From: Oikopleura dioica
Lineage: Eukaryota; Animalia; Chordata
Reading direction: 5' to 3'
DNA length: 64,000 bases
NCBI GenBank assembly: GCA_907165135.1
Contig: OU015566.1
Coordinates: 13,516,001 to 13,580,000 of the forward strand
Positions 13,476-51,911 of the stretch are shown piece after piece (the first letter of the stretch is position 1; every line of letters starts with the position of its first letter). A program made the position numbers and the translations under genes. Below the pieces are notes generated by a model, which worked only from the letters and a program-made list of their open reading frames with translations, was not told where the DNA came from and made no database searches.

Positions 13476-15236
<1,761 letters not shown>

Positions 15237-31211: not shown

Positions 31212-32733
31212 TGCAAATTATGAGCTCCTGCTTTAGATAAGAAAAAGCGCCGCTAAATTCAGAGTATATATTCAAGTCCTTTTCAAGTTGAACTCGAATT
31301 GAACAACGCGCACTTGCGTAAGCCCCGGTTTTTTTATCGATGAGCTTAAATATTTACTTCTACGAATGTAACTAATCCGCTTCGTCGCTGACGCAACGGG
31401 CTGGTGATAAAGTTTCAACCCTTTTTTCGCGAAAAAAAGTGCAGAAAAAGGGCCCCTCTTGAAATTCAAGCGTTTTCATTAAACTAAAGACATCCTCCTC
31501 GGAAGTCAAAGAAGATCCCTAAAGGATATTAGCAAATCCTTAAATTAGGAAAAAAACGGGTTCGAGGAGGAAGTTTAGGGAACGGGAAATTAAGTACCGT
31601 GAACGCTACCTTGTTTGGCGGGAGAGGAAAGGTCTAAAAGTAGCGAAAGGAATCTGGGCCCGGACTCCCGGAGACCTCAAAAATTTGTAAAATCAAGTGA
31701 CGTTTGATCAAATATCATGTAAAATCGCAGAGCGCAACAAAATTGTTGAAGGATTTTTTAGACTCTAAATCTTTTTCTTTCATAAAAATTTCGTATAAGA
31801 GACAATTAAGGGACCCCCACACGATATTTTGGAAAGAAAAAAGGGAGAAAATTCCAATAAGGCAAGAAAAAGAAGCGTCAATTTAAGACGAACCCTCGAA
31901 ATTCGGATCCGAAAGGGTTCAACTTTGTTGAAAAAAAGTGGAAGCAATTGTCAAACAAAAAAGACTTCACGGTGACAGTTTGTTAGGTAATTATACGCTG
32001 TGCAGAGCCTTAACAAAAGGTCGTGGCTGAATCATGAATCCTGAATTACAATTGAAATACCGACAAAATATCTTCCAAAAGCAAGAAGCAGAAAAAATGA
32101 TAATGTGAAAAAAAAGAAGCCCAAGATTCCAGGAAGCGCTCGTGGCTAATTAGCTCAATTTCTGTTTATAACAGTACGTCAGTTTTTCGCCAATTAAAGC
32201 CCTAATTGACCGTGCCTTCCCGTCCAAGCTCACGCAAATTGAAGAAGATAGGCCACGCTGCTTCAGGCGTTCCTCTGTACTTTTAAAAAACTCCAGTGAA
32301 CTTTTTTTTTTCTTATCAGCGGTTTTTGATGATTTGGCTCAAAAGTCTAAAATGACTCAAAACAGAGTTATATCCTTATCAACAACAAGCCGCGGTATTG
32401 CCGCATACAAGATTAAGATTCTTGCGGCGAGGAGAAATTTACATCATTTTTTTGATAATTTTTTTAATTAATTTTTTTATTATTTTTATTTTTCATATCC
32501 AAAACAAAGTCAAAAAAAGGGTTCAAACTTGACCTAATTAATTGTTCATTTATAATTGAAATTCTAGCTTCAGAAATAGGTTTCTCCCCCTGGCCCATTT
32601 ATTAGTCTAATTATGTCCTTAATTATCTGTCGATTGTCAAATTAATTTAAATCAGTTCACGGCGATGCCGGCGGAAAAACGTTGTGATCCGGGAAAAAAG
32701 GGTTGGTTGACCAAAATTTGACGCAGAAATTGT

Positions 32734-33130
32734 CACGATAAATTGCTCCTGCAGAAACTCAACACCCTCAGTACTCTCACACGTGTAAGCGTTCTAACGT
32801 TTATTCTAGTACAGCAGTTAGGCTCAACAAAACAAACACGGGTTCTACAGCGTCTCCAGCGGTGATGATGGAGGCCCGAGAAGGATACACGTGATGGAAG
32901 TTGATGTTGGAAGCTGCGTCTCCACGTTCACTGAACAAACCTGAAATCCGATTAGTCTGCTGTAGCTCCACTAGAATCTCTAAATAAACGTGCTTCACCT
33001 CGAGTTCGAACGCTAAGCGTATGAGCAACGGTTGGTGCGAACTCAGCCGACCGTTCTCGCGCGTAGGTTTTCTTCCTGAGGGCAGGCGAGCCTGGCCGAA
33101 CCATTATTCTATCGTCTAAATCCTAACGTC
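32734..33130 (-). repeat. 3' LTR (397 bp)
   Basis: Matches 45876-46272 wherever compared; AATAAA on the element strand at 32800-32805; two CACGTG. Confidence 0.95.
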
Positions 33131-33140
33131 CCCCCTATTT
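33131..33140 (-). promoter_or_regulatory. Polypurine tract
   Basis: AAATAGGGGG(G) directly abutting the 3' LTR on the element strand. Confidence 0.7.
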
Positions 33141-33168
33141 GACCGAAGTAAACCTACCAGACCTACGT

Positions 33169-34466
33169 TTAGTATCTTCCCCGTCGAGCGCCGCGGCCGT
33201 TGAATGATCCTCGTTTTGGCGCGAAACCGTGATAGTTTCCTCGGGCTGGAGCAGGTCGTTTATATGCTCCTTCGCCGCTGAATCCTCCAGATGCTGAGCT
33301 CCACGAGCGTCCACCCGTGTACACTTTCCAGTGCTGGGCCCATGCTGGAAGGGGAATCCTCTCAACCACGTGACGGTTTTCCTCGATGCTGAAGGATGTT
33401 TCTAGGCAGCGCAAGCTTCCATTGCCGCCGACTATCACAAGTTGACAAGGCCGAAGGTGGTCCATCCCGAGCACGTGACAAAGCCTGGCCTTTTCGCCCC
33501 ACTTCGAGCAATACTCGATCAACGTCTCCAACGTCCAATTCTTCATTTCCTCCACCGATTGGATGAAGTCCAAGCCCGCCGCTTGACTTTTGATTGCCAA
33601 CTCCGACGTGGTATCGACCCATCCCCGGAGCTCGTCCTTTGACGCCTTTTCTCCCGGCTTTGGCGAGAGCTGATAATATTGTTAAATCGATGGGAACCCC
33701 GCCGGGTTTTTATCGAATATCGCAACGTGAATCAATACCCGTTTATTTCACTTACCCAGTTGGGGCTAAGGGCGCTAAAGAGACCCTGGAGATTGACCAC
33801 GTTCGCCTTGATCAAATCGTCAGCCACAACCTCACTCGCCATATTCCAGAATCTTGATTTTAACTCCTCAGTGCTGTCACACTCGTAGAGCTTCATTCTA
33901 AATCCCGACGACTTCGGGAAAAAGAGATCGTTCACCGTCACGAGGTAAGAATAGTAACCCCCAACAAGCCGAGGCGCGTTTATGAATTGATCCACTAGGT
34001 CTTGCGACCCCTTCAGCTGCAACAGCACGAATGGAAGCGTCGACGTTCGCGTGTTCTTCTGAACTCTACCGGTAAGTTTCCTTTACTACACGTGTAAGCA
34101 GACCTGTTCTTCAACCGTGAAAATCATTCGCTCCGCCTTCGCAATCTTATCACATAAGATGCGGAGAGCCGACATAAACTTTTTCACTTCCGGATCGTTT
34201 TCGTTAATCTTCACGTCCTCGATCTTTGCGAATGTGCTGACGAATTGCGCCACGGGTACGCCGCCCTTGAGCTCGTTTCTTGCACGTGTAGATTCTTCTG
34301 ACAACTTGACGTCGCGGGCTAGATCTAACTGGCCCGAAGTCATCCGGCGCTTATCATCCGTCTTGAACATGCTCGTGGTTTCTGGTGGTTGGTAGCCATC
34401 ATCTAGGTCACGGAAGGACGGGCCTGCCGTTTCCATTTCCATAGGGGTAGACTTTTTAGGGGGCAT
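33169..34466 (-). CDS. Accessory gene A: predicted 388-aa protein with a Gly/Arg-rich C-terminus, three exons (34466-34104, 34058-33756, 33669-33169)
   Basis: GT-AG introns of 45 and 86 nt (the second with GTAAGT) fuse three ORFs in frame. Ends ...PARGNYHGFAPKRGSFNGRGARRGRY, with the stop 38 bp before the LTR. Confidence 0.7.
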
Positions 34467-34649
34467 TCAGTCTAAACCGGAATTCAATTAATAAATTTAT
34501 CTACGTCTATTTTGATTAGCTCGGTACACGGGAAAGTTAGTTAAAACACGTGTTGAATGCCCCGTCCGGCGGGAGAAGTTACTCCTCGTTGATTTCGTCG
34601 TTGTCTCCATACTGGGAGCCTAAACCACTTATTACTTTTGGCTTTTTAG

Positions 34650-36366
34650 GTCTTTTCCGAAGATTTTCTCCAGAGAATTGACCGGCATCGAGGCCTACTT
34701 CAACAATCTTGCCCGCCGCCGCGAACTACATCCAGACCGCCCACGTGATCTCCTCTACAAGTACGAGTTCGATGCCCGCAGCGTGTTTCCTCAACGTGGG
34801 ACCCGCCGAGCCTACCGAGATGAAAACGTTGCGAATTCTACCCAGCGTATCACCTCACTTCGTGTCCTCTCTGACGTGCTCGGAGTCGATATTACTCCCG
34901 CTCTGCTCCGAACCGGTCGAATTCCAATTCGCGTGAGATTCGAAATCGACGGCCATCGTGAAGATCTTCGAGCTGAAATTCACCTTCCACGACCTGTTGA
35001 CCTCCAGGTCAACGTCTACACTCTTTACTGCGAATATCAGTCCGCAGTCAACCGAATTTCTGACGACCGAGACCGTATCACACGTGATCATCGTGCTATC
35101 GCGTGTCGCCGCTTCTTGGTGCACCTTCTGCGCTACACCACCTTCCGAATTCACGACGCTGCCCAGCTCTTCCACAAAATCAACCGGCCGCTTTCACACG
35201 AGATTGGCGATCCATCTGTAGGATACTTTCACTACAGTCTTGACCACGCCCCGCCATACTTCGTCTTTCTGCTCTGGTCCGTCGCTCTGCACGGGGTAAG
35301 TACTTTATTCTAAATCACTTTGCGTTTAAACTTGCCTTTTCTAACTCAACCTTATAGCGAGTACTCTACGCACGCCGGTGGGGCTTTACACCGCAAAATG
35401 GGCGCCCACATTCACTCGTGTTTAACAGATCATCTCTCCGCAATCCTGCCAGCCCAGAGTCCAACATTATCAGGTGTATTACCTCGGTCTTCGGGCGTGA
35501 TGTTTTCAACAACAGCGAGCACGGATACCGCGGCAGCCTCGGGGACGACAACAGTAAAGGTGACGCGTGAAGTCGCTTTTCCACGTGCTAAAATTCACTA
35601 GTCATTGTTCGTCTCAACTTCAACGATCTCCCGCGCTTCTTCACTGATCACAACCTTTCGATGATCATGTTCCTCGCCCTCTATCTCTTCCAGTGTACCG
35701 AAAAGCACTCCTTTGTCGGACAAGTAAGATGATTACCTGTTTTACCGGCGACCTTCTGCTGATCAGCTCCAGAAATTATGGATTCGTTCCACGTATCTGA
35801 CGCTCCTTTTTTTAGGATGAAGCGGCAGTCATCTTTGCGGGCGGGTTTTGTTACTTAGGGTCCGTTTTTGCCACGCCACGTGTGCTCGTGAAATCTGGTG
35901 GCCTCCGTCTCTTTTACGAGTTCTGCAGCAAAGGCGGCATCCACTTTCCCGACTACGTCAAGAAGCGAACAAACCGCGGCACCGAGATCTATTTCCCACG
36001 TGACATCTTCGCCCACGCCCGTAAGATTACAAAAGATATATTTATTCACGTGCCTTTAACCATCTAGCTCTATCCCAGGCTAAATTTAACATTAAACAAA
36101 TTAAATTAAACAAAATAATTCTAGGTGAGCACAGGGTGATTCCGAAAGGGTCCTTGGAACTCTACCTCGGGGTCGACCTTGTCCAGAAAATTATGGACAC
36201 AGATACCATGGAACTTCCCGTGCTCCCAATTCCTCACGCGCCTCGGTTCGAGACGGTTGATGACGATTCCATCTGGCCCAACGACGCAAAGATCCGTGAG
36301 CAACAAGCCACCCGAGGCTTGCCCACTCCTCTCGGCGGATACGGCCATCTCCGCTACTCCGCTTGA
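34650..36366 (+). CDS. Accessory gene B: antisense orphan of about 480 aa or more, at least five exons, start unresolved
   Basis: Introns 35296-35357, 35560-35601, 35724-35815 and 36021-36067 (or to 36124), all GT-AG, keep one open frame through ORFs 34678, 35882 and 36136. Confidence 0.7.
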
Positions 36367-36657
36367 TCCTTTCCTGAAATCAACGACGATTCGGCCAGAG
36401 GGCCCACTTCCGCGTGACCCAAATTTCCCGTGTTTATTTTTCTCCGTTTCTTTGGCTGCGAGAAAGCAAACTCTTCCAGCCAGCCTAAACAATTTTGTCC
36501 TACTGATTTGTTTACTTTTCTCACCTTCATGTTTCGCTTTCCGTTTCGCCGTATTTTCGGCCATCACTTTAAAATTTTCCGTTATCGCTCGCGCCAAATC
36601 CGCGTCAGTTCTTGCTCCATTTCGAAACTTATCATAACACGAGTCAACTTTTCCCAT
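36121..36657 (-). CDS. Possible accessory ORF C (basic N-terminal half)
   Basis: Long ORF from ATG 36657, but its 3' half is an in-register antisense overlap of gene B's last exon and could be a shadow. Confidence 0.3.
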   Translation of the reverse strand: MGKVDSCYDKFRNGARTDADLARAITENFKVMAENTAKRKAKHEGEKSKQISRTKLFRLAGRVCFLAAKETEKNKHGKFGSRGSGPSGRIVVDFRKGSSGVAEMAVSAERSGQASGGLLLTDLCVVGPDGIVINRLEPRRVRNWEHGKFHGICVHNFLDKVDPEVEFQGPFRNHPVLT

Positions 36658-36792
36658 TTCTAAACGACCAAATAAATGTCTTTTCTTAACCCGTCTCAAT
36701 TATTCAGCACGTGTTCTCGTGAATTGCTGTAATTAAACTGTCACGTAGCTAAGCTCTTCGAGGGGTGGTGGAGTCCATTTCGATATCAGCGA

Positions 36793-37414
36793 CTAGAAAA
36801 TGTCATGCTTCAACTCCGACAGGCTGCTTTTACCGTTCGGTCGTTGTGCAAAGCGGCGGAAGCGAACTGCTTCTTCGGCCTGATCGGCCGCGCCGTTGTT
36901 GACATCCCTAGCTCTAAGTGGCCTAGCATCGCACGTGATTCCCCGAATGCTGACCATCGACTGCATCAGTAACCCCGGGAAGTTGCACGGATCCACGTCC
37001 AGCACGTTGGCCACCCCGACCACGTTGTGAACCATGAGGTCGAATTCTCGGATCATGGCATTGTGCCCTTTGCTTTGCGCCTCCACCACTTAATCACTAT
37101 TGAAGCGACGCTACGGCTGCTTAAGCCTTACCTTCTATCAAATCGCTCAGCTCAGCGCGAACTCTTGCGATCATCGCCTCAGCCGGGTTGACCAGCGCGG
37201 ACGTTACCGGCAGAAACACTGCAGTGTCGATCTTCAGTCCACAATCCGGGCAAGCAGCGCAATCCTTCGCGCAGTTCACACACACGTGATTATCACACGA
37301 GTGGACGATGCACCGTCGCCGACAGAAATCCATCTCACGAGTGCAGATAGAGCACGCTCCTAGCACTGATCTTGGAAAGTTGTCCAAGAACATGCGAATT
37401 CCCTGGGGATCCAT
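36793..37414 (-). CDS. Accessory gene D: RING-finger (C3HC4-like) protein, about 190 aa, two or three exons
   Basis: CSIC-x15-C-x2-H-x-C-x2-C-x6-CPDC; a 43-nt GTAAGG...AAG intron (37131-37089) joins ORF 36793-37089 in frame. Confidence 0.65.
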
Positions 37415-37704
37415 TTCCTTCTAAATTCACAACTTCATTAAAATCCCTCGAAATCAGAAGACGGTACACGTGAGCACAAATAAATACAAAACCAGATGTA
37501 ACACGTGAACACATACAAAGTATTAAAACTTCCGGCTTCGCTTCTCTATCGCCCCGCATAATTTTCTCTCACGAACTTTTCCTGGATCTGCAATTTGACC
37601 CTTATTTCAATTTGTTTGCCTAACCCACCGGTTGGCGCTCGATCATTGGTCCTCGCTGTCTTCGACCCGCGCTCCTGACTTACGCATCACACCTGGCTGG
37701 TCAA

Positions 37705-38817
37705 ATGTTCACGAGTCGAAAAGAGAAAAGAACCTGGGATGCCTCGGAAACCTTGCCCGAGTCCGCTCCCCATCGTGAAAGTAAAATTCCACGTGATTCC
37801 GACGAAGCTCGCCCGTCTGCCAAACATGAATTTCTCGTGCCAAATCCCGTCGACGCTCCTGGGGGTCCTACTGTTTCCGCTGCAAACATATCGTCTACAC
37901 CCATGAAACATCCTCCTGGTGCATCCGACGTGGATTTTGATGCGAGTCGAATACCTCTTTCCGACAATTTAGCATCCGCTATGTCCCTCGATCACACGGA
38001 GTTTGCCTCGGAAAAAACCCTCCTCGGTCACGAGACAAAAGTCCCTGCGGGCGATGACACTATGATATCTCAAGACAAGACCACTATTCTTATGAACACT
38101 ATCGATCACCTGATCGACAAGAATGCCAGTCGGCTCTCCGTTAAGAGCGAGCCTGACGCTCCAGCTCCTATGGAGCTTCCGATTCTGCCCACTTTTGTGC
38201 CACGTGACCATCTATATACTCGCTGGTATTTAACAACTCATTTCAAATCTCCTTTAATAACTGACCTTTTTTAGTTACTCTCTCCAGAATTTACCGCCGA
38301 ACTTGTTTCCTGAATTTGAAATCGACGTGTTAAAGTACTATTCGCGTGGCCCACTTCTCGTACACCACGTGTTCGTTGATCTTCGCCAGCAAGCTGGTCT
38401 TCAGCACCGAATTCTCCAACATCCATTCTCACGTGTCAAACAATTTTTACTACATATAGGTACGGCTTCGTTTCGACGCGCACGACTCATATTACAGGTC
38501 GGACATTTCACTACTCACGAGTGGCTCCTCCATGCAAATTCGAACTATCCTTTCCTCCGACCGTGGAAATTGCTGCCAAAGGTTTCACCCCCGCATTTGC
38601 TCGTGATCTTCGTGGTTTACTCACGTGTTATCTCACCTCGCTTAGTGAATACTATCGCGGAAGTTGTTTTATCCAGCCTCGCACGGAAACTCAGAAGCGG
38701 CGCCTCATCGAGCTCGCGCATTCATTGTGCGACAACTTTTTCGCTCAGAATTTCGGACACGATTATCGGCCTCCATTTCTCGTCGAATATGACTCGAATC
38801 GTCGACCTAGAGAGTAA
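37705..38817 (+). CDS. Accessory gene E: antisense orphan, predicted 341 aa, three exons (37705-38225, 38275-38459, 38498-38817)
   Basis: GT-AG introns of 49 and 38 nt link three ORFs in frame; Pro/Ser-rich N-terminal half. Confidence 0.7.
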
Positions 38818-39617
38818 CCAGCCATTACCCACTATCGTCCTTAAAACCTCACGTGAACGCAAACGAACCAACTTTACTCTTCCACGATTCTCCTGCACTC
38901 TACCACTCATCTTTCTGATCTTTGCCGTTCTTTTCTTCATCCTCGTCGCTTACGCCGTATCCTTCTTCCGCGAAAAGCTCACAGCGCTCGCACACTACGT
39001 CCAGTATTTTCACACGTTTAGCCCGGTAATGCACTACATAAGGCTGCGTTAAACTAATCTCTAGCTTCCCAAAACTCATCGACGCCGACGTCAAATTGGT
39101 TTCGACGAGCTCATGTCCGTTAGCGCTGCCGCCTATGACCCCGAGCCTGTACCTGAGAACTCCCCCGTCACCACCACCATGCGTTTTGGTGGTGCAAGCC
39201 CTTGGGAATGGTAAGATCAATTGTCACTCAACCATCATGACACGTTCAAGGGTCACTTTCGGGGTCGCTTCTCTGTTTTTCTTCTCGTGTCTCCTCTGCG
39301 CCTGCGGACATCAAATAACAGCTGTCCTGAGACAATGCACGTGGAGCCTACCGAATCCTGGATCCAGTCACGACGATGGTGAATTTTCTGAAGTGATTGC
39401 TCTTCGTCGACAAATAGCCGCAGACGAACAAATGATCAAGGCGCGCAAGGCTCACTCCAAAGTCACGAAGAAACTTCGCGCTCTCGGCCCTGCTCACACT
39501 GAAATCTCATCCGTCGTACCGGCGACCGACGCTCACACTCCTACACGTGCTTCTTCTCGAAACGCAGAGCCGCTGCTCCACGTCGCTGACCACGAAAACT
39601 CTGCCTGCTGGGCTTAA
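38789..39617 (+). CDS. Accessory gene F: antisense two-TM membrane protein, predicted 249 aa, three exons (38789-39025, 39065-39210, 39251-39617)
   Basis: GT-AG introns of 39 and 40 nt. TM1 LPLIFLIFAVLFFILVAYAVSFF, HRRRR polybasic site, TM2 WVTFGVASLFFFSCLLCACG. Confidence 0.65.
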
Positions 39618-39830
39618 ATCTCCCTTTCTTTTGTCCACAAATTTCGCAAATTATTCATCGAATTATGATAGAAACTTGTAGCCACCATTCCAGGAATAAA
39701 TTTCTCACGTGAAACCAATCCGGACTCAGCTTTCCTTAGAAAGTCATTTAAAACATTTTAAACAACCGACAACCACGAAAAGAAACCAACAAACTTTAAT
39801 TTACAATTAGCACGTGTAACGTTGTTGCCA

Positions 39831-42800
39831 CTAGTTATTGCCCGGCGAACCCAGCAAACTTTCATGACTGATCCTGGGGCTTTTCCATTGATCCCGATCC
39901 ATAACTAACGACCTTGCATGCATGAACTCAGGCAGTATTAGGTCTTCGTTGTGACCAAGCATCATCAGGCCCGCGTTATTTGGATCTTTTACGCAGTCTC
40001 CGTCTACGATCGCTCTAATTGCCTTTAAAGACCACGAGTAAATCCTCTTCCTTTTCAACCCGACCTTTTCCGTGAAGCAGAGACCCTCAAACCAATCTAT
40101 CCCTTCGGGGTATTCCTCCGTGCCCGTGACGACAAAGTATGGGTTTAGGTCATTCTTCTGCCATTCCCCTTCTAAAAGAATATAATCGCCAACCTTGATT
40201 GGCTTCTCGAATTCGTCATCGTAGCTATCACCCTTCTCGTAGGGATGAAACTTAATTGGCTTTCTCGTGCGACCTTTCTCCTGGTTCTTAATAAATGCCT
40301 TTCTGCCTCGCTCACGACTCAACGCGATGTGTTCCAAAATTTTATTCATGTCAATTTTCAGCGGGCGATCAAATTTATCACGTGAAAAATAAATCTCATT
40401 TGGAGTATACCCGTGTCTGCTCGGATTTTCATTCAAGCGAGCCGCTGCCTCGACTGCGATCCGCATGTGCGATCCTTTCTTTGAGATTTCCGCCTTCAAA
40501 AACATCGTTAATTTTTGTACACGTGAGTCCATTGGTGAAAGGTGATTCTTGGACTTACTGGTCTTTTCTGGCAGATGGATCTCAATCTTCCAGTCTTTCC
40601 ACACGTCCCTCGTGGCAATACTCTTATTCACACTGCAACCGTCCAAAAAGATCCTAATTCTCTTCTCTCGGATCGGACCTCTCAAAAACTCACCTACAGC
40701 TCTACACAACACTTCCGTGCCTTTGTCCGCAGTCATTTCAGAGTTCTTGATTGGGTACAGCTTCGTTAAGCCCGAAATGGCTTCCGAGACAACCCAAAAC
40801 TTCAGCGTGGATTCCTCATTTCCTGGAAAGGAATTTCTCGTGATCACGTCGGCGAACAAAACTTGACCTAACTCCTTGGGTGACTCGTCGTTGTACTCCT
40901 TCGGGATCACCTCAATTTTCGCCTGCTTTCTGAAGTATGTGCACCCAGTGCAGCTCCTATGGACCTTCTCGACCACCTTGTTCATACCAGTCGACCAAAA
41001 TGTGCATCTCACGTGTTTTTTAAAGGCCGTAAGGGATGTACATCCCGTAACTTTCATCATGTGTCTCACGAGCAACTCTAAATACTCCAAAGGAACTACG
41101 ATCGGCTCGACCTTCTTATCTTCCACGAAGAACGCCTGCCTACACAATATTCCTACATCGTTATCTTCCTTGATTTCACACGACTTTCTCAGGCTCTCAG
41201 CGATCCTGTCACCGTACGGCATTTTTCCGTTCTTACGCTTCGATTCTATCGCTCTCTGCACGTGTCTGTCCGTGAGCTGCATCCTCCTGATTAGCCGAAA
41301 ATTCTCCAGAAACTCCTTCATCGAGAACTTTTTCAAAAAGTCATCCACCTCCACGTGAACTTCTCGCGCTTCTTTAATAAAAGGAGTTTCCTCCTGCGAC
41401 TCATTCGACTCTTTCAATCTTTTAGCCCGTGCTCTCGTGGCCATCATGCAGATTTCCTCTTCCACCTCAATCGGCTTCAAATCTGTCAACTCCGTGGCCT
41501 GCTTCAGCGTATGTCTGAAATCATTCACGTCGTCGATCAGGAAAATGCTATCGAACATCTCGATGCTCACCACGGGTTCCTTTGATTTGCACTCCACCTT
41601 TCCCGCGTGGTTCGCAGTTAACTTTGACAAGTACCCATGGCTGTCCACTTCTACACACATCCTACAATCACCATTGCAAGGCTTGAGATGTGCCTCTGAT
41701 CGGGACAGCATGTCTGCTAAGTCTACTTCAGCCGATCTGCAGCTTTTGTACACGATCCTTACATTGTACGACATCAGCTTCACGAGTCTTTCGTTGATTT
41801 TATAATCCTCTGCCAATTCCTGCCCATTTAAACATCTTTTATACAACTTCTCTACCGAGATCGAATCTGTGATCACCGTCACTGGATTGTTCACGAGGTC
41901 AATTTCCCACGAGCAGTGAATTACCGCGTTCAGAATCCCGTGCAACTCGAGTAAACAGCTGCACCATTGCGTGTTGTTGTTCGCATCCGGCCTTTTCTTG
42001 GAGTAAAGCTTATTAAGCCTTACTTTCCCATTCTCATCCTTTTGGTACAAAAATGCACCCGTGCCCTTGTTACTCGAGTCAACCACGAGAAACGTCTCGA
42101 ATTCTGCAACCACCGGGTACAGTGAGACTAAGCTTTCGTCCAGCTCTTTCTGCACTTTCTTATAACCTGCTATTAACTCGTCTGTCCAATTAATATGCTC
42201 CGCTAGGCTTTTCTTATTCTTCGTGGCTTCATACAACGGGGCTAAAATCTCCGTTCTAAACGGGAGGGAATCCGCAATGTATGTGATCCAGCCGAGCACT
42301 CTTTTCATGCATTTCACCGTTTTTATGCTCGTGTATTCCTGGTTCGCAATTTTCTCCAACACGTGTGTACTGGCTCTAATCGTGCCATTCTTTACTCTTC
42401 TTCCCAAAATGGAGATGTCTTTGCTCAAAAACGTGCACTTCTTTCCTTTCAACCTCAGATTAAACGAACTCAGTGTCTGCAAGACCGCCGCCACGTTCTC
42501 AAGAAATTCTTCCGGGGTTTTACCTACGATACAAATGTCGTCGACGTATATAAAACAATATTCTCTGTGGCTATATAAGATAATCTTCAATTTTTCACGT
42601 GCTAATAACGGGCTCGAAATCCAACCCATCGGAAGTCTCCTGTAAGCCATAGGCCCCACGTCCGGATGGTCCAGACAAAAATGTGGCCACATAATCGGGT
42701 GGAATGGGAAACAATAAAACATCGAGGAGATGTCAATGCACGCGATGAGACCCGTTTCAGTGTATTTTGCCACCTTCTGGAGCACGTACTTGATTGAATC

Positions 42801-45731
42801 AGTCTGCCTCGCAGAATGCACCGTGTCGTCATTGATTTTCGCTCTCTTACAGTCCGCCACCACGCGGATTGATCCAGCGCACAACTCAACCTTTGCAGTT
42901 TCAGCATTCTTCTTCCCCACGGGAAAGAAGCTCAAGAAATGCTTTGGAGTCATATGCTTAGGTAGGAACCCGATCACGCCTTCACTGGCTTCCTGATCTA
43001 ACTTGTCCACGAGCGCTTTCACAACTGACTCGGACATCGACTTGTTATAGCTCTGTCTCACCACCTTGCCGGACGTGTTACCCGTTATTTCAGCGTAAAT
43101 TTGGAACTCTTCCCCTGGTACACAGCCCTGTGTCCCTTCGTACAGGACCTTCTCCTTCTCCAGAATCGACAGCAGTCTCTTCTTGTAATTCTTTCCGTCC
43201 GGAATGTCCTTCAACACTTCATTGTTCACGTCAATATTGCACTCCATCCACGTGTTCTTTTCACGAGCCGCCTGATGCATCTTTTCCAGCTTTCTTGCAT
43301 AATTCACACGTGAATCTGGGTTCATTCTACCCGTGGGGGCCATATCGATGACTGAACTTGACACGCTCGGTACCAAGGTTTCGCACCTAGCAGCCGGCAT
43401 CAGCCTTTCATTCTTCACGACTTCGTACAAATTGAAGTTGTGAATCAAATTTTCTAACTCAAAAATTTCGCTTCTTTTCTTGAAACCCAAATTGCTTATG
43501 TCTACACCTCGAATCGATACTCTAGTTTCAAAGCAATTCTCTCTTGGGATACACTCGATTTTCGCGCAATTTCTTGCCAAATCGCCAAGCGAAACCAACA
43601 CGTTTCTGTCACTGCCTTCACAAACCTTCGCATTCACGAAGGAAATTTTCACGTTCCTACGTAGCCTCAACGTGAACGACACAGTGACTGGTAAGAATTT
43701 CAGCAAACTGCCCCCGGCCACCTTTCCTGCACCTGCACGAGACTTGCTTATCTTTGTTCCTTTGCTCAATTTTATCAACTCAAATAAACTCTCACTTAAC
43801 AGCGACACTGATGCCCCTGTGTCTAGTAGAAGTTTAAACCACACGTGTTCATTTTTATTCAAAACCTTCTCGCAATCAGGCAAACAGAAGTAAATCTGCA
43901 ACAATCTTCTATCCGGCTCCTTCTCTTCATCACGTGTTGTTTCCTCTACTGTTGCCCTTAATTTACAATCGTTAATCTCTCTAATTTTTGCGAATACCTC
44001 ACCGTCTAATCCGAAGTCTTCATAACCATCTTTGTCATCCAAATCCAGCTCACTGAGTAGGGCGCCAATGTCCTCACCTGATTCGGACCCCGAATACTCA
44101 CAGTGCGACCGAAGCGCCAATAACTCGTGAACCCCAACATCTTCCTGGAGGGTGTAAACACGTGGACTGCCCGACTGTTTCACCCCCTTCTTCTTAATAA
44201 ATCGGTTAAATTTACCTTTTATATCCGGTCGTTTGAACTGGCCTTTCGGTTTGTAGAACTTACTGGGGTCTTGTTTCTTTAATACTTCCAGGTCCCTCTT
44301 GTTCAAAGACTGACCCGTGTAAGCCAAAATTTTTCCCGTGCCAAACTCGACCTTCAAGTCTGGACTGTTTGTCAACTGGCTCAACCCCATGTCTCTACCA
44401 TTCGGCCTCGGAAAACTCGCCCTATTTCGGGCCATCCATTTCTCAGCCCGTTGCGCACCAAACTTCTTTGATACAAAGGCATTCAATTCAGCCTCAATTT
44501 CCTCATCCAAAGCGTTCGCCTCGTCATCTTCGGGAACGAAACTCTTCACGTGATTCGATTTTCTATTCTTGACTGCACTGCTCTGCTGGGAACAAACAAA
44601 CGCCAATGTTGACCGAAAATCATTGGTAAACATATCTAATGCCAGCTCAACCTGTGTTAACTCCACGTGACCCTGAGCCTTTGATGCCTTGTCAATCTCG
44701 TCTAGAAATAATCTCTTTTCGACGATGACATCTCGACTCAACAAGTCCTTGAACTCTAAATGGCGCTTGGTGGCAACTTTTTCTAAAATATTCTCCCATT
44801 GCCTTGGTTCCAAGCTAACTGCGCATAAAGCCAATGCAGTAGATTCCGCAAATGGGCCAAAGACATCAGGAGTAGTGCAATACTCCTCCCTAAATCTACT
44901 TGCGCCCATTGGCGTTCCACGTGGAAATCTGTTCGGTACAACAGCATTATTTGTCATAATTTTCCTCATCAACTTCCTGATGATTTCATACGTGGAACTA
45001 GTCTTGATATGAGACAATTCACCCTTCCCGACCACCTGAAGAAATTTCAGGAATTTAAAATAGTCGTTTGTTCGTGAATTATCTGCATAATCACGTGTCA
45101 TAATTTCTGCATACTGATTCAGGCTTGTGACGTAACCATTTCGCATATCATCGCGTGAAGTATCCTCCACGTTTTCACAAACTACTGGGCAGATCTTACG
45201 CACAACCGCCAAAACCTCGTCAGCTGCCGATGGTCTCCCATCCACGCGCTCGAAGTATCGCAGTAATGGCAATTCTAAACCCGGGAAAAACGTATCTTTG
45301 AAAGCTCTTTCACTCTCTTCACGATTCTGGACTGCATTGTCCATGAATCCATCATGCGTGGCGTTTACGGTGCAGTGGCTTAAAGTACCAGTGTACCTAC
45401 CAGCTGCCCGCCAACCTTCGAACATTGCCAGACCATCGGGAACCGATAACCGGCCCGTCAAATCAGGCAACCTGCCGAAATTCTCTCCCCATAAAAGAGG
45501 GACGTTTGAGACTTGGTCTGCAAACCTATTTTCACGATCATTTTTCCTGATTTCTCCGGAGAGAATTCCAGACACGTGGTTAAGCCATCCCAGAATTTTC
45601 TGGGACCTAACACTATCGTCCGCTGCCGTAAAGGCCAGTGGCACGATTTCTTTCCCGGTATAATACTTCAGCCCCGGAGGACACTGAAACATACCGTTAT
45701 TATCATACGCGTTCATAATTATAATGGCCAA
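39831..45731 (-). CDS. gag-pol: Gag-Pol polyprotein (Gag, aspartic protease, RT, RNase H, integrase), 1966 aa, uninterrupted
   Basis: LLDTGAS (PR); FIYVDDICIVG (RT); VVDSS..LELHG..ITDS..DLADMLSR (RH); H..CTGC, FADV/FLDG/MDSRV and a GPY/F-like tail (IN). Gypsy domain order; no CCHC knuckle seen in Gag. Confidence 0.97.
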   Translation of the reverse strand: MAIIIMNAYDNNGMFQCPPGLKYYTGKEIVPLAFTAADDSVRSQKILGWLNHVSGILSGEIRKNDRENRFADQVSNVPLLWGENFGRLPDLTGRLSVPDGLAMFEGWRAAGRYTGTLSHCTVNATHDGFMDNAVQNREESERAFKDTFFPGLELPLLRYFERVDGRPSAADEVLAVVRKICPVVCENVEDTSRDDMRNGYVTSLNQYAEIMTRDYADNSRTNDYFKFLKFLQVVGKGELSHIKTSSTYEIIRKLMRKIMTNNAVVPNRFPRGTPMGASRFREEYCTTPDVFGPFAESTALALCAVSLEPRQWENILEKVATKRHLEFKDLLSRDVIVEKRLFLDEIDKASKAQGHVELTQVELALDMFTNDFRSTLAFVCSQQSSAVKNRKSNHVKSFVPEDDEANALDEEIEAELNAFVSKKFGAQRAEKWMARNRASFPRPNGRDMGLSQLTNSPDLKVEFGTGKILAYTGQSLNKRDLEVLKKQDPSKFYKPKGQFKRPDIKGKFNRFIKKKGVKQSGSPRVYTLQEDVGVHELLALRSHCEYSGSESGEDIGALLSELDLDDKDGYEDFGLDGEVFAKIREINDCKLRATVEETTRDEEKEPDRRLLQIYFCLPDCEKVLNKNEHVWFKLLLDTGASVSLLSESLFELIKLSKGTKISKSRAGAGKVAGGSLLKFLPVTVSFTLRLRRNVKISFVNAKVCEGSDRNVLVSLGDLARNCAKIECIPRENCFETRVSIRGVDISNLGFKKRSEIFELENLIHNFNLYEVVKNERLMPAARCETLVPSVSSSVIDMAPTGRMNPDSRVNYARKLEKMHQAAREKNTWMECNIDVNNEVLKDIPDGKNYKKRLLSILEKEKVLYEGTQGCVPGEEFQIYAEITGNTSGKVVRQSYNKSMSESVVKALVDKLDQEASEGVIGFLPKHMTPKHFLSFFPVGKKNAETAKVELCAGSIRVVADCKRAKINDDTVHSARQTDSIKYVLQKVAKYTETGLIACIDISSMFYCFPFHPIMWPHFCLDHPDVGPMAYRRLPMGWISSPLLAREKLKIILYSHREYCFIYVDDICIVGKTPEEFLENVAAVLQTLSSFNLRLKGKKCTFLSKDISILGRRVKNGTIRASTHVLEKIANQEYTSIKTVKCMKRVLGWITYIADSLPFRTEILAPLYEATKNKKSLAEHINWTDELIAGYKKVQKELDESLVSLYPVVAEFETFLVVDSSNKGTGAFLYQKDENGKVRLNKLYSKKRPDANNNTQWCSCLLELHGILNAVIHCSWEIDLVNNPVTVITDSISVEKLYKRCLNGQELAEDYKINERLVKLMSYNVRIVYKSCRSAEVDLADMLSRSEAHLKPCNGDCRMCVEVDSHGYLSKLTANHAGKVECKSKEPVVSIEMFDSIFLIDDVNDFRHTLKQATELTDLKPIEVEEEICMMATRARAKRLKESNESQEETPFIKEAREVHVEVDDFLKKFSMKEFLENFRLIRRMQLTDRHVQRAIESKRKNGKMPYGDRIAESLRKSCEIKEDNDVGILCRQAFFVEDKKVEPIVVPLEYLELLVRHMMKVTGCTSLTAFKKHVRCTFWSTGMNKVVEKVHRSCTGCTYFRKQAKIEVIPKEYNDESPKELGQVLFADVITRNSFPGNEESTLKFWVVSEAISGLTKLYPIKNSEMTADKGTEVLCRAVGEFLRGPIREKRIRIFLDGCSVNKSIATRDVWKDWKIEIHLPEKTSKSKNHLSPMDSRVQKLTMFLKAEISKKGSHMRIAVEAAARLNENPSRHGYTPNEIYFSRDKFDRPLKIDMNKILEHIALSRERGRKAFIKNQEKGRTRKPIKFHPYEKGDSYDDEFEKPIKVGDYILLEGEWQKNDLNPYFVVTGTEEYPEGIDWFEGLCFTEKVGLKRKRIYSWSLKAIRAIVDGDCVKDPNNAGLMMLGHNEDLILPEFMHARSLVMDRDQWKSPRISHESLLGSPGNN

Positions 45732-45789
45732 GTCAACGACAAGGTCTCGAGGTTTGAATTACTGAGTAGCAGTCCGTGCCCTAAGCCTT

Positions 45790-45871
45790 GGTCTCGGAAT
45801 CAGGTAATTCCTTCCCTTAGCTTCTAGAAGTAAGGTCTCGGAATCAGGTAACTCCTTCCCAAAGCTTCCAG
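45790..45871. repeat. Two-copy tandem repeat (period 44) in the element leader
   Basis: GGTCTCGGAATCAGGTAAYTCCTTCCC..AGCTTCYAG starting at 45790 and 45834. Confidence 0.8.
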
Positions 45872-45877
45872 TCACCA
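45868..45877 (-). promoter_or_regulatory. Candidate primer-binding site
   Basis: TGGTGACTGG on the element strand, overlapping the LTR end. TGGTGAC would pair with a tRNA ending GUCACCA (Trp-like); the match is short. Confidence 0.4.
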
Positions 45878-46272
45878 CGATAAATTGCTCCTGCAGAAAC
45901 TCAACACCCTCAGTACTCTCACACGTGTAAGCGTTCTAACGTTTATTCTAGTACAGCAGTTAGGCTCAACAAAACAAACACGGGTTCTACAGCGTCTCCA
46001 GCGGTGATGATGGAGGCCCGAGAAGGATACACGTGATGGAAGTTGATGTTGGAAGCTGCGTCTCCACGTTCACTGAACAAACCTGAAATCCGATTAGTCT
46101 GCTGTAGCTCCACTAGAATCTCTAAATAAACGTGCTTCACCTCGAGTTCGAACGCTAAGCGTATGAGCAACGGTTGGTGCGAACTCAGCCGACCGTTCTC
46201 GCGCGTAGGTTTTCTTCCTGAGGGCAGGCGAGCCTGGCCGAACCATTATTCTATCGTCTAAATCCTAACGTC
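45876..46272 (-). repeat. 5' LTR (397 bp)
   Basis: Direct repeat of 32734-33130. Confidence 0.95.
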
Positions 46273-47624
46273 ATTAAAAATTTTGAAGTTTCAAGGTAAA
46301 AAAATGAAGAAAAAAGAGCTGATTGATTCTTAAGGGTATCAACAACGGTTTTGGGCATTTTTAAGGGACTTTTTTCAATCGTTGTTGACACCCTAGTTTT
46401 ATTATTTTCAACCTCCAAAACGCGGATCGAGCAATGGTAAACCGGAAGTGCGGTTACTATAACGGCGGATTAGAAGAACATGCTCTTGGAGATCTGGTCT
46501 TTTGGGCTGCTTGGCGCTGCCCTTTTCAACAAAAACGAGCGAAAATAGTATGACTCTGTCAGGTGCCACGTTAGCAGCTACAAACGCTGTTGGTTCACAT
46601 AAACCGCACCTTGACACCAGAAACGATGGGATTACGCTCAAGTTAGAGATAGACTTTAAAATTGATGCCCGGAACTAATTCCGAACGGAGCCAGAGTTTA
46701 GGGCTCATCCAATTTTCCAGAGCAGCAGTTCAGTGGCTATCCATATCCGGCTCTAGTTACCGTCTAAGAGCGGAATAAGTGCGAATTTTTTCACATTCAC
46801 GATTCGACTCAAATTTCTTGCATTTTTTTCAGCAAATTATTTCAAAAAATAATCACGGTGACACCCTTATTTCTGCAAAAAAAACCTTTCTAAGTTTGGA
46901 AATTTTCAGGTATAAAAGTAAAATCATAAGAAATAAGGGTGTCACAATGCAAACTTAATTCTCAAAAAATATGAAAAATTCTTACGGTGACACCCTAATT
47001 TCTAGAAAACTCTTAAAACAGGCCAAAAAACTTTTTTTTTGAAAGAAAAAATTAAGAGAAATAAGGGTGTCACAATACTAATTATATTCTCGAAAAATGC
47101 GCTTAAAAGTCAAGTTATTTTATGTAGATCCCCTTAATTTTTTTTCTCTTGGAAATTTTCTTTTCTAAGAAAAATATTCACTTTCTTAGCTTTAGATAAC
47201 CCTTCTCCGGCTTGCGGAATTTCATAAGCCAAGCATTTTTGAGTAGCGGATTTTGAATTCAAATTCACACTTGCGCGGCCTTTCAAAAAATTCCTGACAA
47301 AAAAATTCGTTTCATGCTCAAATCCTCAAATCCGGATTAAAAAAGAACGCTTTCGTTCCAAAAATCCAGGCTGAGTCACGTGATAAGGGAATTATTGAAG
47401 AAATGAGGGATAATTTGAGCCACGTTTTTTCTCCCCGGCAGCTGTTTCTAAAAGATTGGGGATGAGCGCCGAGGAGAATCAAGATCATCCCATAATTAAC
47501 ACCTGAGCTGTGGGGGAAAGAGAGAGTCAAGGGTGGTGGCGATGGAGATAATTATCACGGTCTTATTTCTTTTTGAGCAAAATATCGACCACGTTACGTG
47601 TTGCTTGAATTTTGTTTTGATTAA

Positions 47625-48124
47625 GGACCCCCTCGTCATGTTGGAATGACTTTTTCAAACATGCATTTCGGGTTGAAACCCTTAAGATTTTGAAAACATT
47701 TTTGTGGGTTTATGTAGCTAGATAGTTGGTCGAGGGCACCAGATAGTCAAGAACGCTCGTGCATTTCTTAAGGGTGTCGCTTTGATAGGTTAAAGTCAAA
47801 ATTTTTTCAAACATGAATATCTCACCGATAACCTTAATTTAAGAAAATTTTGAAATTCCTAAAATTTAACTCAGAGCTCTGTCGAGGGCACCAGATAGTT
47901 ATTACGATTATATCTTTATGGGTTTACTCCGAAAAAAGGGATTAAAGGTCGCTTATCAGCCAAAAAATGGGCAAATTTTGCGAGAAAAGCCCGAAAATCT
48001 CGATTTTCAACCTCGATTTTAAAGGCGTTAGAGTCGAGATGGAATTTTGTCATAATAGAGAAAAATCATTCTCAGAACTCAGAGAATCGATTCCCGAAAA
48101 TCGTCAAACATGACGGGGGGGTCC
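47625..48124. mobile_element. About 500-bp MITE with TTAA duplication (Kolobok-like)
   Basis: TTAA|GGACCCCCTCGTCATG ... CATGACGGGGGGTCC|TTAA. Confidence 0.7.
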
Positions 48125-50318: not shown

Positions 50319-51376
50319 ATGGCTGAAATGTATCAAGAGATCGAATATATTGCCCGAAGTGAAACGAGTCCCTCGGAAAGAGGTACTAGTTATAGTGAGA
50401 ATGAAAGGTTTCTTCGGATGGAAGAAAAGATAAATGAGATTTTTCAAAACTTTCGAGAAGAAAATTCATTTTTGAGGAACAAAGTTTATGATCTTGAAAA
50501 GGAAGTCAAGGTCATCGTGAGCTTTTGTCGTCACAAGACGTAATAATTTCTTTGAAGACATTAAAAAATATTGTGAATGACCAATCCGAAACGATTCAAG
50601 AGCTGAAAGACAATCGCGAGAATGTTGATCTTTCAAACAAGAAGCGTGATGAAGAGATTGAGGAAATTCGGACACTTACTGAGGGATTTTCGGAGAATCA
50701 GAAGAAATTTAGGGAGTTTCATGATTCCTCTTCTAAAAAACTCGCGAAATTGCTTGATGAAGCCGCATCGATAACGGTTGGGCAGGAAGATACTTCTTCA
50801 TTGCTTACTAAAAGGTTATATTTTTCTTCCTCTGATTGAATAAATATTTATTCAAGTGACCGTCGATTAATGATTGAGAGTCAACTTCTCGGAGACTTTG
50901 ATGTCTCCGTTAAACCAATTCTGGATCTACGGGAGGCTTGCTCAGGCAAAGACATGTATCTTGTTCTTTCTGCTCTTCTTGCAAAGGAAAAAAGTGTTAA
51001 TTTCAAGTTTGATTACATCGTTAATAAGCGACGTATAGGTTTCAATCGCGTCTTTTCTATCCCCCATAGTTCCCTTTTTACTGAATGTCAATTTTTCGAA
51101 AATAAGGTGCTCATCGATTTCAAATTAGTACTACCGTTCGAGGCAAAAATAAGCGTTTCTTCACTTATTAATCAAAATAAGCAAGTTCAATACAATGCAT
51201 ATAAAAAATCTGAGATAAATTATCTCCAGCTTGCGTATGCCTTTGAAGACGTAAATATAATTGGGAAGAAGGAAGACGATAAATTTGTCTACAGATATGT
51301 TCATCAAGGACGCGAACGTGTGTCGCCAAATTATAATCATGCAACCCTTACTTGGATCATAAAAATACTCCAATAA
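50319..51376 (+). CDS. Uncharacterised multi-exon coiled-coil protein
   Basis: Three collinear ORFs with short gaps; N-terminal coiled coil. Confidence 0.45.
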
Positions 51377-51911
51377 ACGATCACTATCTCCAACTTTATC
51401 CCTTGTTTCTGATAACGAAGTGACGCTTTCATCCCCTTAGTTTTCTCGTGACGCAAAGGTCAGCCCTGAAACAACCCCGAAACATGAGTTCATTTCACAG
51501 AAAAATTTCTTCACCGAAAATCTTGCCAACTAGTTTGTTTACGGCGTTGGCCACTGTGAGATTCTTGAGAGCTCACTAAGAGCGAACTAATGAACGAATA
51601 GAACGACCTTGGAATCTGTCAACATGTGGTTAGAACATTAGCCCGTTAAATTTGCGAGGCGGCGAATGCACGTTGTAGAAAATTGCTTTCCACGATTTTG
51701 AAAATGAGAAAAATGATCCTTTTTTTAACGATTTTAAGAAAAAAAATTATTCATAAGAAAAAATTAGCTAAAGCAGCATTTTTTGCAGTATCTTTGTTTG
51801 ATCTGAGATTTTTTGGTTATTTAAGGGTGTACCCAACCCTTTGGCACTGGAATTTATCGACCTTGGAGGCTAACAATCGTTTATATAAAACAATTATTAA
51901 GAAACCGGCGT

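What the first reader, a model, noticed from the sequence alone, without database searches (positions are those of the whole stretch)
32780..46035. Element-wide array of the CACGTG palindrome (at least 47 copies, about 15-fold excess)
Seen: I count 47 CACGTG in 13.5 kb (about one per 290 bp) against about 3 expected from composition, and about a dozen in the other 50 kb. They occur in both LTRs, in intergenic spacers, inside three short introns (34089, 35582, 36047) and in all three reading frames of Gag-Pol (e.g. NHV, SRV, NTW), so codon usage alone does not explain them. The + strand 3' flank is A/T in 39 of 47 versus 28 of 47 for the 5' flank, a hint of orientation. Knowledge: CACGTG is the class B E-box of Myc/Max, USF and MiT/TFE, and 6-nt palindromes form retroviral kissing loops. 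Inference: a distributed cis code under selection, serving either host bHLH recruitment, genome dimerisation or packaging, or an element-encoded RNA-binding protein.
Basis: partly seen in the sequence, partly recalled or inferred. Interest (0 to 1): 0.9.

Follow-up and report, generated by a model that had tools for sequence, protein, structure and literature searches.

The report
Retroelement studded with CACGTG sites
A young, giant retrovirus-like jumping gene in a marine-animal-type genome carries the 6-letter palindrome CACGTG about every 290 bases, 15 times more often than chance; the excess looks selected and is absent from the relatives examined, but what reads it is unknown.

Summary
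About 3 are expected from composition or dinucleotide shuffles (maximum 9 in 500), giving z≈25, the top hexamer by far.

The carrier is a 13.5-kb Ty3/gypsy-type LTR retroelement on the minus strand (32734-46272). It has identical 397-bp LTRs, an intact 1966-aa Gag-Pol and a 6.7-kb 3' region of unknown content.

In Gag-Pol the excess survives codon-preserving shuffles (17 sites against 2.8). All 8 His-Val dipeptides are CAC-GTG, and relatives lack His-Val at those columns. Sites are spaced more evenly than random, and half-degenerate CACGNG sites are also in excess.

Relatives at 30-36% protein identity have no excess of this or any other motif. Closer fragments (45-71%) show no protein-level footprint. 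The array is therefore a recent gain in a narrow lineage.

RNA accessibility gives no support to kissing loops. The best reading is a dispersed tag read on double-stranded DNA by a dimeric, bHLH-type factor, probably of the host. This is inferred, not shown. I found no precedent in the literature. DNA of closer relatives was not fetched; that step is referred.

The parts
32734..46272 (-). Whole LTR retroelement (13,539 bp), sense strand is the minus strand
   Evidence: Self-BLAST and base-by-base extension define the LTR pair. GC is 0.45-0.50 and GC skew about -0.2 on the + strand across the whole span, against about 0.38 GC in the flanks.
45876..46272 (-). 5' LTR (397 bp) with 2 CACGTG (46030, 45922); both lie downstream of the TATA-like and near the AATAAA-like strings
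   Evidence: 100% identical to the other LTR; sequence read. The ends are not TG..CA and there is no clean target-site duplication.
32734..33130 (-). 3' LTR (397 bp) with 2 CACGTG (32888, 32780), preceded on the sense strand by a purine run ending in five G (polypurine-tract-like)
39831..45731 (-). Gag-Pol ORF, 1966 codons, uninterrupted, first Met at codon 6; 17 CACGTG
   Evidence: Pfam finds RVT_1, RT_RNaseH_2, RT_RNaseH and a weak gag-asp_proteas hit. The best solved structure is Ty3 RT/RNase H. YVDD at residue 1062; no CCHC knuckle.
43719..43847 (-). Aspartic protease signal (residues 629-671)
   Evidence: Pfam PF13975, E = 0.0044, below the curated cut-off
42399..42809 (-). Reverse transcriptase core (residues 975-1111)
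   Evidence: Pfam RVT_1, E = 1.3e-13
41829..42188 (-). RNase H domain (residues 1182-1301)
   Evidence: Pfam RT_RNaseH_2 and RT_RNaseH
40029..41096 (-). Divergent integrase region (about residues 1546-1901)
   Evidence: Weak Integrase_H2C2 hit. The AlphaFold model is of low confidence (pLDDT 44.5). Foldseek nevertheless returns Ty3 integrase first (7q5b_B, probability 0.99) and then only retroviral integrases. The sequence profile against PDB does not reach it.
33131..39830 (-). 3' region (6.7 kb) given as one part: sense-strand coding-like segments that are interrupted; 26 CACGTG (3.9 per kb)
   Evidence: Eight sense segments of 75-192 codons have Gag-Pol-like codon scores and every antisense segment scores negative. 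No Pfam family was found when searched segment by segment. No translated similarity to the 3' regions of relatives.
32780..46035 (.). The CACGTG array, 47 copies. Starts: 32780 32888 33367 33472 34089 34283 34547 34742 35081 35582 35877 35997 36047 36708 36932 37283 37467 37502 37790 38201 38366 38430 38622 38850 39338 39544 39706 39811 40379 40520 41010 41259 41352 42360 42596 43249 43307 43842 43931 44159 44547 44664 44918 45092 45573 45922 46030
   Evidence: Mean gap 288 nt; CV 0.71 against 0.98 for random placement (P = 0.007); minimum gap 35 nt. A further 61 dispersed CACGNG/CNCGTG sites bring the total to 108.

Best explanation
The carrier is a recently inserted, apparently intact, giant Ty3/gypsy-type LTR retroelement related to the Tor group of Oikopleura. 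Its own narrow lineage has accumulated about 45 independent CACGTG sites, plus about 60 half-degenerate CACGNG sites, spread over the LTRs, the coding sequence and the uncharacterised 3' region.

Shown: the excess is far beyond composition, dinucleotide and codon-usage nulls. It reaches into protein sequence. It is spaced more evenly than chance. It is absent from the relatives examined.

Inferred: the array is kept by selection on the element. The motif is read on double-stranded DNA (provirus or cDNA) by a dimeric reader with two half-sites, most likely a host bHLH-family factor (class B / 'E-box C' specificity). One site every one to two nucleosome lengths would act as a distributed chromatin or transcription control for the whole element, for example keeping it accessible or tying its expression to cells that hold the factor, rather than as a local enhancer.

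For: Null models: 47 observed against 3.09 +/- 1.75.

Coding sequence: in the ORF, 17 observed against 2.77 +/- 1.45 (maximum 8 in 2000) under synonymous shuffles. From the protein and its own codon usage I expect 2.0, 0.6 and 0.2 sites per register, against 8, 8 and 1 observed. Half of all CGT Arg codons lie in the motif, and 8 of 8 His-Val are CAC-GTG. His-Val occurs 8 times against 2.9 expected, and only 1 of 78 aligned cells in relatives has His-Val at those columns. Density is highest where the protein is least constrained: gag 3.9 per kb and the 3' region 3.9, against RT-RH 2.35.

Spacing: CV 0.71, P = 0.007; no two sites closer than 35 nt, P = 0.005.

Reader fingerprint: the motif is a perfect palindrome, and only 1.6% of hexamers are palindromes. 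Centre variants are depleted (8 against 16.8). Variants with one altered half are enriched (60 against 17.7). Variants with both halves altered are not enriched. This is the graded pattern of a two-half-site dimer; CACGNG is described as 'E-box C' in PMC5655970.

Host: the flanks also use the motif more than chance (15 against 4.05, rank 15 of 1990), while their variants are at expectation.

Precedent in kin: in Tor elements, tissue-specific expression depends on determinants inside the element, and some have internal promoters (PMC4402516).

Against an RNA role: predicted accessibility equals that of controls.
Against: No binding data exist, and the host and its bHLH repertoire are unidentified. 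The flanks are not symmetric as a homodimer would predict: 8-nt palindromes number 10 of 45 against 12.2 expected, and A/T is favoured only on the sense-strand 5' side. Canonical bHLH contacts make positions 2 and 5 the least tolerant, yet here they are the most tolerant; this fits the 'E-box C' class but not class B readers in general. Both LTR sites lie downstream of the TATA-like string, not in a typical upstream enhancer position. Why 45 dispersed sites should be better than a cluster is unexplained. No relative shares the array, so conservation cannot be used as evidence of function.
Confidence: 0.45

Rival explanations
1. An element-encoded protein (Gag, integrase or a product of the uncharacterised 3' region) reads the motif as a self-label. 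This could be on genomic RNA for selective packaging, or on cDNA or proviral DNA. The logic would be like the dispersed packaging signals of some RNA viruses or bacterial DNA uptake sequences, and each lineage would be free to evolve its own tag.
For: The array is lineage-specific and sits in an element with 6.7 kb of fast-evolving coding-like sequence of unknown function. It is dispersed, evenly spaced, and occurs in coding and non-coding parts alike. The sense-strand one-sided A/T flank hints at a strand-specific reader.
Against: No DNA- or RNA-binding domain was recognised in any segment, and Gag has no zinc knuckle. The relatives examined carry no alternative dispersed motif of their own; the best z is 5-9 on 6-8 copies, for k = 6-8, so 'a tag per lineage' is not seen. 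A strand-specific reader gives no reason for a perfect palindrome or for half-site grading.
Confidence: 0.2
2. This is an RNA-level role of the self-complementary hexamer: multivalent CACGUG-CACGUG pairing between or within genomic RNAs, serving dimerisation, condensation or packaging.
For: The hexamer is a palindrome and so pairs with itself. It has many copies on one transcript, and they are evenly spread.
Against: Predicted probability that the hexamer is unpaired is the same as for GC-matched and central-CG controls (median 0.018 against 0.014, p = 0.2), and no site is predicted to be exposed. There is no site in the 144-nt leader where dimer-initiation sites normally lie. Enrichment of half-degenerate variants that cannot self-pair (CACGAG and others) is not expected under pairing.
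Confidence: 0.1
3. This is a neutral by-product of a host-specific mutation, repair or conversion bias that creates CACGTG, and it has no function for the element.
For: The host flanks also show a 3.7-fold excess. Absence from relatives could simply reflect different hosts.
Against: A bias with hexamer specificity is unknown. The element is four times richer in the motif than the host's own DNA, and the GC-rich host tubulin region (12001-16000) has none. The element's composition (GC 0.48 against 0.39) shows it is not at host equilibrium. Even spacing and minimum-distance avoidance are not expected from mutation. Non-synonymous gains (His-Val) and realised sites far above codon-usage expectation point to selection. 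Host variants of the motif are at expectation.
Confidence: 0.12
4. This is chance, base composition, codon usage or internal repeats.
For: None beyond the fact that higher-order Markov models absorb part of the excess.
Against: The maximum is 9 in 500 dinucleotide shuffles and 8 in 2000 synonymous shuffles. All site contexts differ, and the only repeat is the LTR pair. The higher-order expectations are circular.
Confidence: 0.01

Closest known systems
Tor elements of Oikopleura dioica (Ty3/gypsy-type retrovirus-like elements; PMC4402516)
   Same: It is an LTR element with gag-pol followed by further coding sequence. The best named relative of the Pol is an O. dioica protein (35% identity). Like recent Tor insertions it has near-identical LTRs and an intact ORF. 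In Tor, regulatory determinants lie inside the element.
   Different: Pol is only about 35% identical. The element is 13.5 kb with a 6.7-kb interrupted 3' region and no recognisable env. There is no clean 4-5-bp target duplication. Nothing like a CACGTG array is reported for Tor in the papers I could read.
Su(Hw) binding-site array of the Drosophila gypsy element (from my own knowledge, not tested here)
   Same: It is a retroelement carrying many copies of one host-factor site, acting at the chromatin level.
   Different: The gypsy array is a tight cluster of about a dozen sites in a few hundred bases of the 5' untranslated region. Here the sites avoid clustering and cover all 13.5 kb, coding sequence included.
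Class B / 'E-box C' sites of bHLH factors (Myc/Max, USF, MiT/TFE, ARNT, Hairy/Hes/Hey; CACGNG named in PMC5655970)
   Same: The core CACGTG, an obligatory central CG, and tolerance of one degenerate half (CACGNG) all match.
   Different: Known functional sites are single or clustered in promoters and enhancers. Here there are no symmetric flank preferences, and no binding was shown.
Bacterial DNA uptake sequences and dispersed packaging signals of RNA viruses (from my own knowledge)
   Same: All are short tags found in large excess, spread more evenly than random, present in coding sequence in several frames, and able to shape peptide content.
   Different: Those tags are orientation-specific and have known readers. 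Here the tag is a palindrome in a eukaryotic retroelement and has no known reader.
Retroviral dimer-initiation palindromes (kissing loops; from my own knowledge)
   Same: Both involve a six-base self-complementary sequence.
   Different: Those are one or a few copies shown in a hairpin loop of the 5' leader. Here there are 47 copies, none in the leader and none predicted to be exposed.

Membership tests
Ty3/gypsy-type LTR retroelement (Metaviridae-like) | Two direct long terminal repeats bounding the element | tested here: met
   397-bp LTRs, 100% identical, 13,142 bp apart
Ty3/gypsy-type LTR retroelement (Metaviridae-like) | Pol domain order protease - RT - RNase H - integrase | tested here: met
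   Pfam finds PR (weak), RT and RH in that order. The integrase is seen only as a weak H2C2 hit and by fold: Ty3 integrase is the top Foldseek hit, from a low-confidence model.
Ty3/gypsy-type LTR retroelement (Metaviridae-like) | RT most similar to Ty3/gypsy RTs, with a YxDD catalytic motif | tested here: met
   Ty3 RT/RH is the best solved structure, by single sequence and by profile. YVDD at residue 1062.
Ty3/gypsy-type LTR retroelement (Metaviridae-like) | Polypurine tract before the 3' LTR and a tRNA primer-binding site after the 5' LTR | tested here: inconclusive
   A purine run ending in five G abuts the 3' LTR. A TGG-containing stretch follows the 5' LTR, but no tRNA match was tested.
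Ty3/gypsy-type LTR retroelement (Metaviridae-like) | TG..CA LTR termini and a 4-6-bp target-site duplication | tested here: not met
   The LTR ends as defined by identity are not TG..CA. The flanking pentamers agree at 3 of 5 positions only. This is a common but not universal feature.
Tor group (Oikopleura) | Pol groups with Tor1-4 in a phylogeny | not tested
   I have only a best named hit to an O. dioica protein at 35% identity. No tree was made, and Tor reference sequences were not fetched (see referred steps).
Tor group (Oikopleura) | Third gene encoding an envelope-like transmembrane glycoprotein | tested here: inconclusive
   The 3' region has coding-like segments but no family hit and no similarity with relatives. 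Exons were not joined.
bHLH E-box (class B / E-box C) site array | CACGTG core with two half-sites, and graded loss when one or both halves change | tested here: met
   Full site 15.3-fold; one half altered 3.4-fold; both halves altered about 1-fold; centre altered 0.48-fold
bHLH E-box (class B / E-box C) site array | Symmetric flank preference, as for a homodimer | tested here: not met
   8-nt palindromes number 10 of 45 against 12.2 expected. A/T is preferred on one side only.
bHLH E-box (class B / E-box C) site array | Occupancy by a bHLH protein of the host | not testable with these tools
   The host is unidentified: two host ORFs gave no hits or only remote hits in the protein collection.
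Retroviral kissing-loop dimer-initiation site | Palindrome displayed in a hairpin loop of the 5' leader | tested here: not met
   There is no site in the leader, 45732-45875. Accessibility equals that of controls and no site is exposed. This rests on prediction only.
Dispersed self-label (uptake-sequence or packaging-signal type) | Many copies, over-dispersed, in coding and non-coding sequence | tested here: met
Dispersed self-label (uptake-sequence or packaging-signal type) | A cognate reader encoded by the system | tested here: inconclusive
   No binding domain was recognised. The model of the largest 3' segment was useless (pLDDT 40.6).

The most novel reading that the evidence does not exclude
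An LTR retroelement has evolved an element-wide 'address label': a palindromic tag repeated about every 290 bp through LTRs, genes and spacers. The tag is written even into the protein sequence, and a dimeric factor reads it along the whole provirus or cDNA. This would be a mode of cis-control not described for retroelements. In logic it is akin to bacterial uptake sequences or to distributed licensing signals in host genes.
Probability: 0.35. Interest if true: 0.85.

Novelty: new variant of a known kind. Interest (0 to 1): 0.66.

Why it matters
Retroelement control sequences are normally sought in the LTRs and leader. Here about 45 independently gained copies of one well-known factor-binding palindrome cover a whole 13.5-kb element. 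They were gained at measurable cost to codon choice and even to amino-acid sequence, and they keep their distance from one another.

If the array is read by a host factor, a mobile element can tune its chromatin state or cell-type expression through its entire body. It could also soak up, or spread through the genome, dozens of sites for a key regulator with every insertion.

If it is read by the element's own protein, it would be the first dispersed self-label in an LTR retroelement. Either way it gives a clear, countable sequence signature that can be searched for in other elements.

Tried and rejected
- **Internal repeats as the source:** rejected. All site contexts differ and only the LTRs repeat.
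- **Codon usage:** rejected.
- **Composite or tandem sites (full site next to a variant):** rejected. Variants are no closer to full sites than random.
- **Helical phasing of the gaps:** no consistent signal.
- **Extended palindromes:** none in excess.
- **'Each lineage has its own motif':** rejected for the relatives held.
- **RNA exposure:** no signal.
- **Host identification:** failed with two host ORFs. The word-index protein search with Pol found only remote hits; the exhaustive search was needed to find the family.
- **Function of the 3' region:** nothing from Pfam searched segment by segment, nothing from tblastx against relatives, and the single-sequence model was useless (pLDDT 40.6), so no fold search was run on it.
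- **Integrase:** not found by Pfam rve or by a profile against PDB; found only by fold.
- **Literature:** no paper links CACGTG with Oikopleura elements or reports an element-wide E-box array. The Oikopleura promoter E-box in PMC6389100 is reported as matching the TFAP4 binding site, not linked to CACGTG.
Full report
**Observation.** The window holds 62 CACGTG, 47 of them with starts between 32780 and 46030. Inside that span base composition predicts 2.7 and a first-order Markov model 3.0. Five hundred dinucleotide-preserving shuffles give 3.09 +/- 1.75, with a maximum of 9. CACGTG is the most over-represented hexamer (z about 25), and the next ones are its own overlaps. Markov orders 3 and 4 predict 23 and 39, but only because their sub-words are supplied by the motif itself. 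Every site has a different context apart from the two LTR pairs, so the excess does not come from internal repeats.

**The carrier.**
- The element lies on the minus strand, 32734-46272.
- Its LTRs are 397 bp and identical (32734-33130 and 45876-46272). That points to a recent insertion.
- One uninterrupted ORF of 1966 codons (45731 down to 39831) has a weak protease hit, RT, RNase H and YVDD. Ty3 RT/RNase H is its best solved relative.
- Its C-terminal third gives only a faint integrase zinc-finger hit. A low-confidence model of it (pLDDT 44.5) retrieves the Ty3 integrase first and then only retroviral integrases.
- The element is therefore a Ty3/gypsy-type element with a very divergent integrase.
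- The LTR ends are not TG..CA and I see no clean target duplication.

**The 3' region.** Between pol and the 3' LTR lie 6.7 kb (33131-39830). Eight sense-strand segments of 75-192 codons there have Gag-Pol-like codon usage, and every antisense segment scores negative. These segments lie in all three frames, separated by roughly seven interruptions (about four or five changes of frame and two or three in-frame stops). None matched a Pfam family or the 3' regions of relatives.

**Host.**
- CpG observed/expected is about 1 and GC about 0.39.
- The window holds a tubulin gene, Sulfotransfer_2 genes and a tRNA-Cys.
- Two host ORFs found nothing useful in the protein collection.
- The exhaustive protein search found a family of roughly 2000-aa Gag-Pols at 30-37% identity. 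The best hit is an Oikopleura dioica protein, and the rest come from metagenome assemblies (ENA, JGI, Logan).
- The host is therefore probably an appendicularian or another marine animal. It is not human.

**Is it selected?**
- In Gag-Pol, 17 sites stand against 2.77 +/- 1.45 (maximum 8 in 2000) when synonymous codons are shuffled.
- From the protein and its own codon usage I expect 2.0, 0.6 and 0.2 sites in the three registers. The observed counts are 8, 8 and 1. Eight of the 16 CGT arginine codons lie in the motif, and all eight His-Val pairs read CAC-GTG.
- His-Val itself is in excess (8 against 2.9). At those eight column pairs only 1 of 78 aligned cells in 14 relatives has His-Val. The residues at sites are otherwise as conserved as their neighbourhood (0.234 against 0.223).
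- Density follows constraint: gag 3.9 per kb and the 3' region 3.9, against 2.35 in PR-RT-RH.
- The sites are over-dispersed: CV of gaps 0.71 against 0.98 (P = 0.007), and none closer than 35 nt (P = 0.005).

These features argue for selection on the nucleotide motif, balanced against protein constraint.

**What is read?**
- Single changes at the centre are depleted (8 against 16.8; CAAGTG/CACTTG 0 against 6.7).
- Changes at the outer positions are mildly enriched (1.6-fold).
- Changes at positions 2 or 5 are strongly enriched (60 against 17.7).
- Changing both halves abolishes the excess.

So one intact CACG/CGTG half-site, plus the outer G and the central CG, is what counts. This is the graded pattern of a reader with two half-sites. 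It matches the site class written CACGNG ('E-box C') in PMC5655970. The 61 variant sites are dispersed and are not paired with full sites.

Against a simple homodimer, the flanks are not symmetric. On the sense strand the base 5' of the motif is A or T in 37 of 45 unique sites (p = 3.5e-5), while the 3' base is at background. This asymmetry comes from the non-ORF part.

**RNA rival.** With local folding (150-nt windows), the probability that the hexamer is unpaired is the same as for matched controls on both strands, and no site is predicted to be exposed. The 144-nt leader has no site.

**Relatives.**
- Six metagenome loci encoding Gag-Pols 30-36% identical hold 1-4 CACGTG per 6-16 kb, as expected by chance.
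- None of them has any other motif (k = 6-8) with a comparable excess.
- One relative has terminal repeats 15.6 kb apart, so giant size is a family trait.
- Closer kin are known only as protein fragments (45-71% identity). At the covered sites 8 of 23 cells could encode the motif, all in conserved RT. The 61%-identical fragment has 0 of 3, and His-Val is not enriched (3 against 5.2).
- The array is therefore a gain of this element's own narrow lineage.

**Host flanks.** There are 15 sites against 4.05 expected, rank 15 of 1990, and the variants are at expectation. The GC-rich tubulin region has none.

**Interpretation.** Chance, composition, codon usage and repeats are excluded. A neutral host mutational bias is unlikely for four reasons:
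- the excess has hexamer specificity;
- the element is four-fold richer in the motif than the host's own DNA;
- the spacing is even;
- some gains are non-synonymous.

The palindrome and the half-site grading favour a dimeric reader of double-stranded DNA. A host bHLH-type factor is the most economical candidate. Tor elements are known to carry internal determinants of tissue-specific expression and internal promoters (PMC4402516). An element-encoded reader (a self-label) remains possible because 6.7 kb of the element is uncharacterised. I found no published precedent for an element-wide E-box array.

1. Searches fetched six metagenome contigs by look-up before I knew that the family's nearest named kin is from an animal. 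I did go on comparing the loci already held. The step is named under referred steps.
2. My script printed the bounds of open segments in the 3' region. If the interruptions are breaks rather than introns, that output shows their places.
3. The leader-RNA sequence was used in no call. Two recalled motif strings, an 8-mer flank extension and the N-box pattern, were counted in my scripts, and nothing in the report rests on those counts. All other strings counted were the finding's own motif and its one-letter or two-letter variants, and the CACGNG and N-box notations were afterwards seen in PMC5655970.

Noticed in passing
window 13921-15036 (+): This is a large exon of a tubulin gene (Pfam Tubulin and Tubulin_C). 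The surrounding 12001-16000 is the most GC-rich host stretch and contains no CACGTG, which makes it a useful internal control.
   Followed up: partly
window 2865-3296 (+) and 4330-5157 (+): These look like two paralogous ORFs. The second matches Pfam Sulfotransfer_2; the first was not tested. Each carries a CACGTG (3033, 4891) in a nearly identical context, so part of the host-flank excess comes from a gene duplication.
   Followed up: partly
window 51912-51983 (+): A tRNA-Cys(GCA) gene, the only Rfam or ARAGORN hit in the window.
   Followed up: no
window flanks 1-32733 and 46273-64000: The hexamers ACTGTA/TACAGT (41 against 10.8) and the AGCTCA/CTCAGC/CAGCTC family are more over-represented in host DNA than CACGTG. 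A short tandem of that type lies at 20903-20940. The cause is unknown; it may be a dispersed host repeat or signal.
   Followed up: no
window 32729-32733 / 46273-46277 and the LTR ends: The LTR termini are not TG..CA, and the flanking pentamers match at only 3 of 5 positions, so there is no clean target-site duplication despite the identical LTRs.
   Followed up: partly
window 46920-46970 and 47048-47098: A 51-nt direct repeat pair (82% identical) lies about 650 nt beyond the element's end.
   Followed up: no
window 33131-39830 (+ strand): Long antisense ORFs (up to 263 codons) all have negative coding scores. They are by-products of the element's skewed composition, not genes.
   Followed up: yes
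L002-L005 (protein P0016): The same 1959-aa Gag-Pol, residue for residue, occurs in four independent samples (two ENA, one JGI, one Logan). This relative is widespread and probably recently active in an abundant organism.
   Followed up: no
L006:1-420 and 15639-16058: Terminal direct repeats of about 420 nt, 86.5% identical, lie 15.6 kb apart. Giant size with a long post-pol region seems to be a trait of the whole family.
   Followed up: partly
window 39831-45731 (-): Gag has no CCHC zinc knuckle, and the integrase core is invisible to Pfam (rve) and to a family profile against PDB. It was detected only by fold.
   Followed up: yes
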